The translations under genes were made by a program, and so were the position numbers. DNA of 64,000 bases. Origin: Euprymna scolopes (Eukaryota). The notes under the pieces were generated by a model. That model made no database searches and was not told the origin of the DNA. It worked only from the letters and a program-made list of their open reading frames with translations. Position 1 is the first letter of the stretch; the number at the start of each line of letters is the position of its first letter. The stretch lies in assembly GCA_053919585.1 (NCBI GenBank), contig CM132791.1, one strand, 5' to 3'. This document shows, piece by piece, positions 9,848-64,000 of the stretch.

Positions 9848-10090
9848 TGTTGTAGCCCCGTTCAAAAGCTCAAAAATGAAAGAAACTTCATGTAGTGTAA
9901 AGTGTATAGCTATAATAAATAATTATCATAAAGAATACAAGAGTCACTAAAGTGGCATAAGAGGAAAATATTCGTAACATGCTATTAAAAATTGGTATGG
10001 ATGTCTCCATCCAATCTCTGAAACCAGTGCATCAATAGGACTGCTTGTTCAAATTATTTCCCAAATAGGGGGGATTTGTACCGCGCAATA
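9848..10090 (-). mobile_element. Putative degenerate 3' LTR of a Ty3/Gypsy element (~243 bp)
   Basis: On the minus strand it starts TATTG (TGTTG with one change) directly after a purine tract and ends CAACA (9852-9848), giving TGTTG...CAACA terminal inverted repeats. No second LTR is in the window to confirm this. Confidence 0.45.
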
Positions 10091-10108
10091 CCTCCTCCGA
10101 GCTTTTCC
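10091..10108 (-). other. Putative polypurine tract (PPT)
   Basis: GGAAAAGCTCGGAGGAGG on the minus strand, between the end of the integrase and the putative LTR. Confidence 0.5.
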
Positions 10109-10129
10109 GCCCCCTGGAATGATCGTATA

Positions 10130-58500: not shown

Positions 58501-61500
58501 GCCGGCGACATATTAGATGAAGCGCTTTCATTTGGCGTATTTCGGATCCTTTTCTGAACTTTTCCCTGTTCCCCTACCTTACTATTATTTTTGCGTATCT
58601 GGAAAAATTAATTCATCTCCAGGTAAGTGCCTCTTTCTCCGAAGTATAATATTCGGTCATTCACTTGTTTTGGCAAAAGTGGTCGAAGACCTGCCTAATT
58701 TTCCTCGCGAATATTTACTCTGCCGGCGACATATTAGATGAAGCGCTTTCATTTGGCGTATTTCGGATCCTTTTCTGAACTTTTCCCTGTTCCCCTACCT
58801 TACTATTATTTTTGCGTATCTGGAAAAATTAATTCATCCCCAGGTAAGTGCCTCTTTCTCCGAAGTATAATATTCGGTCATTCACTTGTTTTGGCAAAAG
58901 TGGTCGAAGACCTGCCTAATTTTCCTCGCGAATATTTACTCTGCCGGCGACATATTAGATGAAGCGCTTTCATTTGGCGTATTTCGGATACTTTTCTGAA
59001 CTTTTCCCTGTTCCCCTACCTTACTATTATTTTTGCGTATCTGGAAAAATTAATTCATCCCCAGGTAAGTGCCTCTTTCTCCGAAGTATAATATTCGGTC
59101 ATTCACTTGTTTTGGCAAAAGTGGTCGAAGACCTGCCTAATTTTCCTCGCGAATATTTACTCTGCCGGCGACATATTAGATGAAGCGCTTTCATTTGGCG
59201 TATTTTGGATACTTTTCTGAACTTTTCCCTGTTCCCCTACCTTACTATTATTTTTGCGTATCTGGAAAAATTAATTCATCCCCAGGTAAGTGCCTCTTTC
59301 TCCGAAGTATAATATTCGGTCATTCACTTGTTTTTGCAAAAGTGGTCGAAGACCTGCCTAATTTTCCTCGCGAATATTTACTCTGCCGGCGACATATTAG
59401 ATGAAGCGCTTTCATTTGGCGTATTTCGGATACTTTTATGAACTTTTCCCTGTTCCCCTACCTGACTATTATTTTTGCGTATCTGGAAAAATTAATTCAT
59501 CCCCAGGTAAGTGCCTCTTTCTCCGAAGTATAATATTCGGTCATTCACTTGTTTTGGCAAAAGTGGTCGAAGTCCTGCCTAATTTTCCTCGCGAATATTT
59601 ACTCTGCCGGCGACATATTAGATGAAGCGCTTTCATTTGACGTATTTCGGATACTTTTCTGAACTTTTCCCTGTTCCCCTACCTTACTATAATTTTTGCG
59701 TATCTGGAAAAATTAATTCATCTCCAGGTAAGTGCCTCTTTCTCCGAAGTATAATATTCGGTCATTCACTTGTTTTGGCAAAAGTGGTCGAAGACCTGCC
59801 TAATTTTCCTCGCGAATATTTACTCTGCCGGCGACATATTAGATGAAGCGCTTTCATTTGGCGTATTTCGGATCCTTTTCTGAACTTTTCCCTGTTCCCC
59901 TACCTTACTATTATTTTTGCGTATCTGGAAAAATTAATTCATCCCCAGGTAAGTGCCTCTTTCTCCGAAGTATAATATTCGGTCATTCACTTGTTTTGGC
60001 AAAAGTGGTCGAAGACCTGCCTAATTTTCCTCGCGAATATTTACTCTGCCGGCGACATATTAGATGAAGCGCTTTCATTTGGCGTATTTCGGATACTTTT
60101 CTGAACTTTTCCCGGTTCCCCTACCTTACTATTATTTTTGCGTATCTGGAAAAATTAATTCATCCCCAGGTAAGTGCCTCTTTCTCCGAAGTATAATATT
60201 CGGTCATTCACTTGTTTTGGAAAAAGTTGTCGAAGACCTGCCTAATTTTCCTCGCGAATATTTACTCTGCCGGCGACATATTAGATGAAGCGCTTTCATT
60301 TGGCGTATTTCGGATACTTTTCTGAACTTTTCCCTGTTCCCCTACCTTACTATTATTTTTGCGTATCTGGAAAAAGTAATTCATCCCCAGGTAAGTGCCT
60401 CTTTCTCCGAAGTATAATATTCGCTCATTCACTTGTTTTGGCAAAAGTGGTCGAAGACCTGCCTAATTTTCCTCGCGAATATTTACTCTGCCGGCGACAT
60501 ATTAGATGAAGCGCTTTCATTTGGCGTATTTCGGATACTTTTCTGAACTTTTCCCTGTTCCCCTACCTTACTATTATTTTTGCGTATCTGGAAAAATTAA
60601 TTCATCCCCAGGTAAGTGCCTCTTTCTCCGAAGTATAATATTCGGTCATTCACTTGTTTTGGAAAAAGTGGTCGAAGACCTGCCTAATTTTCCTCGCGAA
60701 TATTTACTCTGCCGGCGACATATTAGATGAAGCGCTTTCATTTGGCGTATTTCGGACACTTTTCTGAACTTTTCCCTGTTCCCCTACCTTACTATTATTT
60801 TTGCGTATCTGGAAAAATTAATTCATCCCCAGGTAAGTGCCTCTTTCTCCGAAGTATAATATTCGGTCATTCACTTGTTTTGGCAAAAGTGGTCGAAGAC
60901 CTGCCTAATTTTCCTCGCGAATATTTACTCTGCCGGCGACATATTAGATGAAGCGCTTTCATTTGGCGTATTTCGGATCCTTTTCTGAACTTTTCCCTGT
61001 TCCCCTACCTTACTATTATTTTTGCGTATCTGGAAAAATTAATTCATCCCCAGGTAAGTGCCTCTTTCTCCGAAGTATAATATTCGGTCATTCACTTGTT
61101 TTGGCAAAAGTGGTCGAAGACCTGCCTAATTTTCCTCGCGAATATTTACTCTGCCGGCGACATATTAGATGAAGCGCTTTCATTTGGCGTATTTCGGATC
61201 CTTTTCTGAACTTTTCCCTTTTCCCCTACCTTACTATTATTTTTGCGTATCTGGAAAAATTAATTCATCCCCAGGTAAGTGCCTCTTTCTCCGAAGTATA
61301 ATATTCGGTCATTCACTTGTTTTGGCAAAAGTGGTCGAAGACCTGCCTAATTTTCCTCGCGAATATTTACTCTGCCGGCGACATATTAGATGAAGCGCTT
61401 TCATTTGGCGTATTTCGGATACTTTTCTGAACTTTTCCCTGTTCCCCTACCTGACTATTATTTTTGCGTATCTGGAAAAATTAATTCATCCCCAGGTAAG

Positions 61501-64000
61501 TGCCTCTTTCTCCGAAGTATAATATTCGGTCATTCACTTGTTTTGGCAAAAGTGGTCGAAGTCCTGCCTAATTTTCCTCGCGAATATTTACTGTGACGGC
61601 GACATATTAGATGAAGCGCTTTCATTTGACGTATTTCGGATACTTTTCTGAACTTTTCCCTGTTCCCCTACCTTACTATAATTTTTGCGTATCTGGAAAA
61701 ATTAATTCATCCCCAGGTAAGTGCCTCTTTCTCCGAAGTATAATATTCGGTCATTCACTTGTTTTGGCAAAAGTGGTCGAAGACCTGCCTAATTTTCCTC
61801 GCGAATATTTACTCTGCCGGCGACATATTAGATGAAGCGCTTTCATTTGGCGTATTTTGGATACTTTTCTGAACTTTTCCCTGTTCCCCTACCTTACTAT
61901 TATTTTTGCGTATCTGGAAAAATTAATTCATCCCCAGGTAAGTGCCTCTTTCTCCGAAGTATAATATTCGGTCATTCACTTGTTTTTGCAAAAGTGGTCG
62001 AAGACCTGCCTAATTTTCCTCGCGAATATTTACTCTGCCGGCGACATATTAGATGAAGCGCTTTCATTTGGCGTATTTCGGATACTTTTATGAACTTTTC
62101 CCTGTTCCCCTACCTGACTATTATTTTTGCGTATCTGGAAAAATTAATTCATCCCCAGGTAAGTGCCTCTTTCTCCGAAGTATAATATTCGGTCATTCAC
62201 TTGTTTTGGCAAAAGTGGTCGAAGTCCTGCCTAATTTTCCTCGCGAATATTTACTCTGCCGGCGACATATTAGATGAAGCGCTTTCATTTGACGTATTTC
62301 GGATACTTTTCTGAACTTTTCCCTGTTCCCCTACCTTACTATAATTTTTGCGTATCTGGAAAAATTAATTCATCCCCAGGTAAGTGCCTCTTTCTCCGAA
62401 GTATAATATTCGGTCATTCACTTGTTTTGGCAAAAGTGGTCGAAGACCTGCCTAATTTTCCTCGCGAATATTTACTCTGCCGGCGACATATTAGATGAAG
62501 CGCTTTCATTTGGCGTATTTCGGATCCTTTTCTGAACTTTTCCCTGTTCCCCTACCTTACTATTATTTTTGCGTATCTGGAAAAATTAATTCATCCCCAG
62601 GTAAGTGCCTCTTTCTCCGAAGTATAATATTCGGTCATTCACTTGTTTTGGCAAAAGTGGTCGAAGACCTGCCTAATTTTCCTCGCGAATATTTACTCTG
62701 CCGGCGACATATTAGATGAAGCGCTTTCATTTGGCGTATTTCGGATACTTTTCTGAACTTTTCCCGGTTCCCCTACCTTACTATTATTTTTGCGTATCTG
62801 GAAAAATTAATTCATCCCCAGGTAAGTGCCTCTTTCTCCGAAGTATAATATTCGGTCATTCACTTGTTTTGGAAAAAGTTGTCGAAGACCTGCCTAATTT
62901 TCCTCGCGAATATTTACTCTGCCGGCGACATATTAGATGAAGCGCTTTCATTTGGCGTATTTCGGATACTTTTCTGAACTTTTCCCTGTTCCCCTACCTT
63001 ACTATTATTTTTGCGTATCTGGAAAAAGTAATTCATCCCCAGGTAAGTGCCTCTTTCTCCGAAGTATAATATTCGCTCATTCACTTGTTTTGGCAAAAGT
63101 GGTCGAAGACCTGCCTAATTTTCCTCGCGAATATTTACTCTGCCGGCGACATATTAGATGAAGCGCTTTCATTTGGCGTATTTCGGATACTTTTCTGAAC
63201 TTTTCCCTGTTCCCCTACCTTACTATTATTTTTGCGTATCTGGAAAAATTAATTCATCCCCAGGTAAGTGCCTCTTTCTCCGAAGTATAATATTCGGTCA
63301 TTCACTTGTTTTGGAAAAAGTGGTCGAAGACCTGCCTAATTTTCCTCGCGAATATTTACTCTGCCGGCGACATATTAGATGAAGCGCTTTCATTTGGCGT
63401 ATTTCGGACACTTTTCTGAACTTTTCCCTGTTCCCCTACCTTACTATTATTTTTGCGTATCTGGAAAAATTAATTCATCCCCAGGTAAGTGCCTCTTTCT
63501 CCGAAGTATAATATTCGGTCATTCACTTGTTTTGGCAAAAGTGGTCGAAGACCTGCCTAATTTTCCTCGCGAATATTTACTCTGCCGGCGACATATTAGA
63601 TGAAGCGCTTTCATTTGGCGTATTTCGGATCCTTTTCTGAACTTTTCCCTGTTCCCCTACCTTACTATTATTTTTGCGTATCTGGAAAAATTAATTCATC
63701 CCCAGGTAAGTGCCTCTTTCTCCGAAGTATAATATTCGGTCATTCACTTGTTTTGGCAAAAGTGGTCGAAGACCTGCCTAATTTTCCTCGCGAATATTTA
63801 CTCTGCCGGCGACATATTAGATGAAGCGCTTTCATTTGGCGTATTTCGGATCCTTTTCTGAACTTTTCCCTTTTCCCCTACCTTACTATTATTTTTGCGT
63901 ATCTGGAAAAATTAATTCATCCCCAGGTAAGTGCCTCTTTCTCCGAAGTATAATATTCGGTCATTCACTTGTTTTGGCAAAAGTGGTCGAAGACCTGCCT
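10364..64000. repeat. 221-bp satellite array, ~243 head-to-tail copies, runs off the window
   Basis: Exact 221-bp periodicity (ORF starts at 10778, 10999, 11220...). Copies differ by about 0-4 substitutions. I see only five indels: a 1-bp deletion near 13,600 and +A near 16,611, 19,041, 22,359 and 25,011. Left boundary at GATCC 10,364. Confidence 0.99.

What the first reader, a model, noticed from the sequence alone, without database searches (positions are those of the whole stretch)
9848..64000. A >53-kb satellite born in place from the integrase coding region of a dead Gypsy element, with the parent's 3' end still attached in frame
Seen: the minus strand of the 221-bp monomer encodes RNTP..SPAE*IFARKIRQVFD..LPGD..EQGKVQKRI. 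At the array edge (10,364) this frame continues without a break into unique sequence GRMVYIIDGPGFTHTKHLKQI, then a PPT and a TGTTG/CAACA-like bounded LTR. Established: these motifs are typical of Ty3/Gypsy integrase C-termini, and TE-derived satellites are more often reported from LTRs, UTRs or non-coding internal repeats than from pol coding sequence. Inference: an internal 221-bp segment was tandemly duplicated and expanded at least 240-fold at its original locus. The stop codon and frameshifts are shared by essentially all copies while the copies are nearly identical, so the expansion is recent and postdates the element's death. This looks like a snapshot of de novo satellite birth.
Basis: partly seen in the sequence, partly recalled or inferred. 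Interest (0 to 1): 0.85.

Follow-up and report, generated by a model that had tools for sequence, protein, structure and literature searches.

The report
Satellite grown inside one dead retrotransposon
A 98-kb tandem array of a 221-bp unit grew in place from the integrase-coding tail of one old, broken Ty3/Gypsy-type retrotransposon in a mollusc genome; it is a clean example of a known route to satellite DNA, with no sign that it is recent or functional.

Summary
The 221-bp array starts at window 10364 and runs past the window to C9:5,936,413. That is about 98 kb: 443 units plus a 42-bp stub.

The minus strand of the unit matches codons 212-285 of the integrase frame of a dispersed RT-RNase H-integrase family. 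Dispersed copies carry this segment once, directly next to the same 3' end.

In-place origin is strongly supported:
- The array lies between a 3' LTR (9848-10090) and a 5' LTR (C9:5,938,704-5,938,916).
- The unit-to-unit junction occurs 441 times in the 5.9-Gb genome, all on one strand. This one array has 443 junctions.

- The far edge does not enter the integrase core, RNase H or RT. A deletion unique to this copy joins unit position 42 to the start of protease, and about 2.5 kb is missing.
- Recent birth is not shown. The LTRs are 24% diverged, so the insertion is old. The far-end stub shares derived bases with the array but differs at 5 of 42 sites, which hints that the first duplication was much earlier.

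This is a new member of a known kind.

The parts
9843..9847 (.). Left target-site duplication ATTAC. Its twin lies outside the window at L054:3467-3471 (C9:5,938,917-5,938,921).
   Evidence: ATTAC directly follows the outer end of the 5' LTR. The chance at one fixed position is about 0.002. Another family copy, L012, has its own 5-bp duplication, GTTGT.
9848..10090 (-). 3' LTR of the parent element (243 bp). On the element strand it reads TATTG...CAACA; the family has TGTTG...CAACA.
   Evidence: about 30 dispersed copies align from 9848. fixes the inner boundary by family alignment. One search aligns it to the 5' LTR at 76% identity.
10091..10115 (-). Polypurine tract next to the 3' LTR. The element strand reads AGGGGGCGGAAAAGCTCGGAGGAGG, with 21 of 25 purines.
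   Evidence: Read directly from the sequence. It is conserved in family copies.
10116..10363 (-). Unamplified 3' end of pol (integrase C-terminal tail, GRMVYII...TSSTS*). It is in frame with the first array unit.
   Evidence: translation. One search shows gap-free alignment across 10363/10364 to the open family copy c14. Identity to the family is 79.9%.
10364..64000 (-). The 221-bp tandem array, shown here as its in-window part. It continues to C9:5,936,413 (window-equivalent 108,413). The unit matches family integrase codons 212-285 (RITPNES...KVQKRI) and carries one stop and several frameshifts.

Best explanation
One copy of a Ty3/Gypsy-type LTR retrotransposon inserted here on the minus strand and made a 5-bp ATTAC duplication. 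It then decayed for a long time.

A 221-bp internal segment was duplicated head to tail. This segment is the last part of the integrase core, the linker and the first half of the C-terminal domain, already or soon non-coding. There was at most 1 bp of homology at the joint, so the first step was non-homologous. Every unit shares that one joint, which points to a single founding event.

Unequal exchange or replication slippage between units then expanded and homogenised the array to about 443 units (98 kb).

At some stage a microhomology-mediated deletion joined position 42 of a unit to the start of protease. It removed protease, RT, RNase H and the integrase core (about 2.5 kb) plus an unknown number of units. 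It left a 42-bp stub (X') that no longer takes part in homogenisation.

Shown: the anatomy, the single locus, the single insertion and the old age of the insertion. Inferred: the order of duplication and deletion, the expansion mechanism, and an early date for the first duplication. No function is indicated.
For: - **Array extent:**
- **Family identity:** dispersed copies give RVT_1, RT_RNaseH_2, Integrase_H2C2 and rve in that order, with weak retropepsin hits upstream. PDB hits are Ty3 Gag-Pol and PFV integrase.
- **Unit in the family:** it is single-copy and contiguous with the 3' end in dispersed copies.
- **One lineage:** LTR, 3' end and unit are 78.7%, 79.9% and 79.3% identical to the family. 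Family copies are 87-89% identical to each other.
- **Far flank:** colinear with c14:4216 back to 1979, in the same orientation, at 78% identity.
- **One insertion:** a 5' LTR followed by ATTAC.
- **Deletion junction:** unique in the genome.
- **Single locus:** junction pattern gives 408 forward and 0 reverse matches at up to 1 mismatch, and 441 and 0 at up to 3 mismatches, against 443 junctions in this array.
- **X':** shares 3 derived bases with the array but differs at 5 of 42 sites.
- **Independent sample:** DNA run X1 carries the flank at depth 14 and the unit at depth about 2,470.
Against: - The evidence for an early first duplication rests on 42 bp. Four of the five differences are clustered (positions 30-35) and could be one event.
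- Three of the differing sites differ from the family in both X' and the array, which is odd under simple models.
- About 33 kb of the array (C9:5,902,001-5,935,000) was only sampled by four 450-bp probes and by the junction count.
- Independent reads across the left edge fall short of the tool's 31-nt bridging rule. The far junction was not checked with reads at all.
Confidence: 0.85

Rival explanations
1. A recent single burst. The unit stayed single-copy through nearly all of the element's decay and was amplified about 440-fold only lately. X' is just an edge unit hit by a clustered mutation or a small conversion tract.
For: Units are 98.5% identical, with no distance gradient and no higher-order period. 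The unit is exactly as diverged from the family as the unamplified flank. No interruption shows up in the held 64 kb, and the junction count fits an uninterrupted array. The far third is almost uniform.
Against: X' differs at 5 of 42 sites from identical neighbouring units. About 0.3-0.6 differences would be expected at within-array divergence. Concerted evolution predicts all the 'for' observations equally well.
Confidence: 0.3
2. Origin before insertion. Reverse transcriptase switched template twice in one replication cycle, so the inserted cDNA already carried the internal deletion plus 1.19 copies of the segment (X plus X'). The 42-bp direct repeat then seeded unequal exchange.
For: Other family copies (L037, L021, L012) are internal-deletion derivatives that join the gag side to the integrase tail at other breakpoints. 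The junction has 2-5 bp of microhomology. A repeat of 221+42 bp is exactly the substrate that would give an array of n x 221 + 42 bp.
Against: It needs two switches in one cycle. X and X' share 3 to 6 derived bases in 42 bp, more than the roughly 1 expected from pre-insertion lineage divergence. No other copy carries this junction.
Confidence: 0.15
3. The array formed elsewhere, for example as a rolling-circle product of a 221-bp circle or at another family copy, and was placed here by recombination with a resident element. Alternatively the structure is an assembly artefact.
For: None directly. Long satellite arrays are hard to assemble, and the copy number in sample X1 looks lower (depth ratio about 176; this is not a calibrated count).
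Against: Only one locus in the genome has the unit joint. The unit and both flanks share the same unusual 79% divergence from the family. X' and the array share derived bases. The first unit is contiguous and in frame with the flank. The matching TSD shows both flanks belong to one insertion.
Confidence: 0.04

Closest known systems
CRM1TR and CRM4TR tandem repeats of maize (Sharma, Wolfgruber & Presting 2013, PMC3648361)
   Same: Tandem repeats derived entirely from Ty3/gypsy elements. They are confined to one or two loci, homogenised locally, and proposed to start by illegitimate recombination or deletion and then to expand.
   Different: Those units come from the LTR plus the untranslated region. 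Here the unit is pol (integrase) coding sequence. Here the array is also still bracketed by both LTRs and the target-site duplication of a single insertion.
Satellites derived from tandem repeats in LTR-retrotransposon untranslated regions (Ogre elements of Lathyrus and Pisum; PMC7004042, and the review PMC9659126)
   Same: LTR-retrotransposon sequence turned into long satellite arrays.
   Different: Those start from pre-existing short tandem repeats in a non-coding region carried by many elements, and the arrays occur at many loci. Here a unique coding segment of one copy was amplified at one locus.
Satellites derived from transposon ORFs, listed in the review PMC9659126 (HinfI from CR1 ORF2, PROsat from L1 ORF2, rye E3900 from gag, CficCl-61-40 from a CACTA transposase)
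   Same: Coding sequence of a transposable element is the source of the unit.
   Different: None comes from an integrase; that word does not occur in the review. As far as I read, the parental insertion with both ends is not preserved around those arrays.
Sobo satellite of Solanum bulbocastanum (recalled from memory, not checked here)
   Same: A single-locus, recently expanded satellite derived from an LTR retrotransposon.
   Different: Its unit is several kb long and LTR-related, and it is a plant case.

Membership tests
Ty3/Gypsy-type LTR retrotransposon (the parent element) | Direct long terminal repeats at both ends, bounded TG...CA | tested here: met
   3' LTR at 9848-10090 and 5' LTR at L054:3254-3466, 76% identical over 211 aligned sites. 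The family ends are TGTTG...CAACA. L012 shows a second two-LTR copy.
Ty3/Gypsy-type LTR retrotransposon (the parent element) | Short (4-6 bp) target-site duplication | tested here: met
   ATTAC at 9843-9847 and at L054:3467-3471. GTTGT flanks L012.
Ty3/Gypsy-type LTR retrotransposon (the parent element) | pol domain order protease, RT, RNase H, integrase | tested here: met
   Met in dispersed family copies: RVT_1, RT_RNaseH_2/RT_RNaseH, Integrase_H2C2 and rve, in that order along c14 and c6. Protease gives only below-threshold hits. The window's own copy lacks protease through integrase core because of the deletion.
Ty3/Gypsy-type LTR retrotransposon (the parent element) | Polypurine tract before the 3' LTR and a tRNA primer-binding site after the 5' LTR | tested here: inconclusive
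   The PPT is present (10091-10115, 21 of 25 purines, conserved in the family). After the 5' LTR the element strand reads TC TGGCTGACGAGG. I did not compare it with tRNAs.
Ty3/Gypsy-type LTR retrotransposon (the parent element) | RT or integrase groups with Metaviridae rather than BEL/Pao or retroviruses in a tree | not tested
   Only indirect evidence: the Pfam domain types, and PDB hits of equal strength to Ty3 Gag-Pol (7q5b, 3.4e-11) and PFV integrase (2.8e-11).
Transposon-derived satellite DNA | Long head-to-tail array of near-identical units homologous to an internal transposon segment | tested here: met
   443 units, 98.5% mean pairwise identity. The unit is 79% identical and colinear with the single-copy segment of family copies.
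Transposon-derived satellite DNA | Many loci or chromosomes, as in classical satellite families | tested here: not met
   The unit joint occurs only in this array: 441 matches against 443 junctions, none on the reverse strand. It is a single-locus array.
Transposon-derived satellite DNA | Heterochromatic or centromeric location, or transcription | not testable with these tools
   The array lies 5.8 Mb from the start of a 170-Mb contig. Two poly-A RNA runs gave no reads on it, from a 12% sample of each.

The most novel reading that the evidence does not exclude
This array is one instance of a genome-wide habit. This mollusc genome may repeatedly amplify arbitrary 80-300-bp unique segments in place into 10-100-kb arrays with the parent sequence still attached. 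The segments include transposon ORFs, zinc-finger exons and splice sites. That would imply a lineage-specific, still active amplification process and a natural series of satellite births at different ages. A smaller variant of this reading is that such chromosome-specific arrays serve as centromere or pairing sites.
Probability: 0.3. Interest if true: 0.7.

Novelty: new member of a known kind. Interest (0 to 1): 0.5.

Why it matters
How satellites begin is usually inferred from faint similarity between a satellite and a transposon. Here the whole parental insertion survives around the array: both LTRs, the target-site duplication, the in-frame 3' end and the gag-side region. In-place origin from coding sequence is therefore demonstrated rather than guessed.

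The far-end stub also gives an internal time marker, because it separates the first duplication from the later homogenisation. The case extends the list of transposon parts that can seed satellites to the integrase gene. It also gives a dated locus for comparing individuals and sister species.

It does not reveal a new mechanism or a function.

Tried and rejected
- **Extending the contig in one go:** I bracketed the far end with 450-bp probes instead.
- **DNA search with two units:** it did not report the array itself because common words are skipped, so it could not count arrays. I replaced it with a pattern search on the unit-to-unit joint.
- **First reading of the far flank:** I took it as unrelated, with a stray LTR fragment only 77% like the 3' LTR. 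A full-length reference copy then showed colinearity with the family's 5' part, so I rejected that reading.
- **Full-length references:** neither c14 nor c6 has a recognisable 5' LTR in the fetched stretch. LTR status was settled with L012 and the window's own pair.
- **Transcription:** two poly-A RNA runs gave 0 and 2 reads, the latter on the LTR only. Run X2, labelled 'RNA?', shows tagmentation adaptors and cannot count as RNA.
- **Sister species:** no run under another species label holds the unit. Only organism A, one microbial-mat metagenome and one unlabelled run do.
- **Gag-side frames:** no Pfam hit.
- **Consensus:** I built no consensus and no repaired frame of the element.
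Full report
**1. The observation**

Tandem Repeats Finder reports one array at 10364-64000: period 221, 242.7 copies, 98% matches. 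GC content steps from about 0.25-0.38 to a flat 0.40 at the array.

At the array edge the frame that reads ...EQGKVQKRI continues without a break into GRMVYIIDGPGFTHTKHLKQIWKPIKDDERQASVEQEEGMDQIYITSSTS*. In 287 units cut from 63.6 kb:
- 280 are 221 bp long, 5 are 222 bp and 2 are 220 bp. There are 83 distinct sequences.
- Mean pairwise identity is 98.5%. There is no dependence on distance and no clear higher-order period.
- The exact stop-containing 9-mer is in 268 of 287 units. The three indel contexts are in 244-255 units. No unit has a stop-free minus-strand frame.

**2. True size**

The window is G000:C9:5,828,001-5,892,000 in a 5.9-Gb assembly. The next 10 kb is still array. Short probes bracketed the end, and locus L054 shows the last full unit ending at L054:921. 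A 42-bp partial unit, X', follows at L054:922-963, ending at C9:5,936,413.

The array is therefore about 98,050 bp: 443 units plus 42 bp. The first 60 kb has 3.0-3.8 differences per unit pair. The far third is more uniform, and the last four units are identical.

**3. What the unit is**

The unique 516 bp left of the array (9848-10363) matches about 1,176 candidate places in the genome. All scored ones are 78-81% identical and full length from 9848. Two units used as a query hit dispersed copies over one unit length only, often directly next to the flank match. Alignments run through 10363/10364 without a gap.

Dispersed copies carry long open frames. Pfam assigns them RVT_1, RT_RNaseH_2/RT_RNaseH, Integrase_H2C2 and rve, in that order along the reference copies c14 and c6. 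Weak retropepsin hits lie upstream. A 347-aa open integrase frame matches Ty3 Gag-Pol (7q5b, 3.4e-11) and PFV integrase (2.8e-11).

The unit corresponds to residues 212-285 of that frame (RITPNES...KVQKRI). This is just after the Pfam rve core (87-175) and reaches into the C-terminal region. Compared with the open copy, the unit has one stop (ELM to E*I) and indels of net -1.

**4. The far flank and the proof of one insertion**

At first the far flank looked unrelated. Most dispersed copies continue beyond the unit into the integrase core, but the array's far flank does not.

With a longer reference copy, c14 (L055 plus L027), the far flank proved colinear with the family's 5' part, in the same orientation:
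- L054:962-1065 matches c14:4216-4112.
- L054:1128-1620 matches c14:4082-3604.
- L054:1805-2071 matches c14:3388-3127.
- L054:2386-3137 matches c14:2787-1979.

A 5' LTR follows at L054:3254-3466 (213 bp). It aligns end to end with the 3' LTR at 76% identity over 211 aligned sites (K2P 0.285). Directly after it comes ATTAC, the same five bases that precede 9848. The chance of this at one fixed position is about 0.002.

The LTR ends are fixed independently of my choice. The family alignment places the inner end at CAACA next to the polypurine tract. L012 is another two-LTR copy with its own 5-bp duplication, GTTGT.

The array therefore sits inside one insertion spanning C9:5,837,848-5,938,916. 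Only about 3.0 kb of that is not array.

**5. The deletion**

Position 42 of X' is joined to c14:4216, the start of the protease region, with 2-5 bp of microhomology. Protease, RT, RNase H and the integrase core are absent.

A 96-bp query across this junction finds the full length only here. Every other hit covers only the gag half or only the array half. The deletion is therefore private to this copy. The expected gag-side region, 5' LTR and duplication are met.

**6. One lineage, one locus**

The window's LTR, 3' end and unit are 78.7%, 79.9% and 79.3% identical to dispersed copies. Those copies are 87-89% identical to each other. The far flank is 78% identical to c14 and c6, which are 84.7% identical to each other there. 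All four parts share the same excess divergence, as expected for one old copy.

The unit-to-unit joint does not exist in dispersed copies. Genome-wide it occurs 408 times at up to 1 mismatch and 441 times at up to 3 mismatches, never on the reverse strand, with no hits for the reversed control. The array has 443 such joints, and the hit rate in the part I hold (262 of 288) predicts about 403 at up to 1 mismatch. No second array exists in the assembly, even a moderately diverged one.

**7. Timing**

LTR divergence (p 0.237) shows an old insertion. By three-point reasoning, nearly all of the copy's roughly 15% private divergence arose after insertion (inference). The unit is as diverged as the flank. 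So either the present units descend from a unit that had already decayed, or the array has turned over continuously. The two cannot be separated from this.

X' adds one clue:
- At positions 13, 16 and 23 it shares the array's base against 24-28 of 30 family copies, so it is a paralog from this copy.
- It differs from the array at positions 22, 30, 31, 33 and 35, although it abuts four identical units.
- At within-array divergence, 0.3-0.6 differences would be expected in 42 bp.

I read X' as an edge relic of an earlier state of the array, frozen by the deletion. This puts the first duplication well before the present homogeneity. The caveat is the small number of sites, and positions 30-35 may reflect a single event.

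**8. Independent data**

A 2019 DNA run of the same species label (X1) has a 924-nt contig over 9500-10192 at word depth 14, with 15 differences. It also has a cyclic 251-nt unit contig at depth about 2,470. The array is therefore present at high copy number in another sample.

Short contigs cross 10363/10364 with 21 nt on each side, below the tool's bridging rule. Poly-A RNA runs gave no reads on the array. Only organism A runs, one microbial-mat metagenome and one unlabelled run hold the unit.

**9. Comparison with known cases**

Transposon-derived satellites are well documented. A review finds LTR, UTR and TIR origins dominant and lists a few ORF-derived cases (CR1 and L1 ORF2, gag, a CACTA transposase), with no integrase case (PMC9659126). 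Maize CRM1TR and CRM4TR are locus-restricted repeats from Ty3/gypsy LTR plus UTR, proposed to start by illegitimate recombination (PMC3648361).

This case is a new member of that kind. It stands out for its coding (integrase) source and for the intact bracket of LTRs and duplication.

Earlier unchecked notes from this scan list other arrays in the same genome that seem to have grown in place from a LINE RT ORF, an RNase H motif, zinc-finger exons and a mariner. I did not test them. They suggest the phenomenon may be common here.

**10. Verdict**

In-place origin is strongly supported. The far-side anatomy differs from the prediction, and recency is unproven. Interest is moderate.

Noticed in passing
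window 10778-11002, 10999-11223 and every unit after (+ strand): Each unit carries a 74-aa ATG-to-stop frame on the plus strand (MKRFHLAYFGYFSELF...), overlapping the next one by 4 nt. It is probably a chance product of the repeat. It has no family match that I tested, and no RNA reads fall on it.
   Followed up: no
L056:1381-1857 (c6); L055:3127-3198 (c14); L054:2003-2091: The family's 5' region holds a 33-bp minisatellite whose copy number varies: about 14 copies in c6 and about 2 in c14. The family is prone to internal tandem repeats at a second site.
   Followed up: partly
L037, L021, L012: Several dispersed copies are internal-deletion derivatives that join the gag side or the 5' LTR to the integrase tail, each at a different breakpoint. 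L012 is a roughly 1.7-kb two-LTR element with TSD GTTGT.
   Followed up: partly
window 6968-7778 (- strand); L054:6197-6648: LINE-like reverse-transcriptase fragments lie in the left flank (frames such as ...LDKVWHKSLLQKISSYGI...). A 78%-identical copy in inverted orientation lies about 2.7 kb beyond the element's right end.
   Followed up: no
window about 2470-2770 and about 8260-8400: Two runs of N, 408 bases in all.
   Followed up: no
runs X7 and X2: A run labelled 'microbial mat metagenome' holds 64% of the unit's sampled words. This is presumably environmental DNA of this animal or a close relative. Run X2, guessed to be RNA, shows tagmentation adaptor ends and is more likely a DNA library.
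   Followed up: no
L054:962-1010 (gag-side 49 bp at the deletion junction): This short stretch is 92-94% identical to many dispersed copies, while the rest of the flank is about 78%. It is either a locally conserved element sequence or sampling noise.
   Followed up: no
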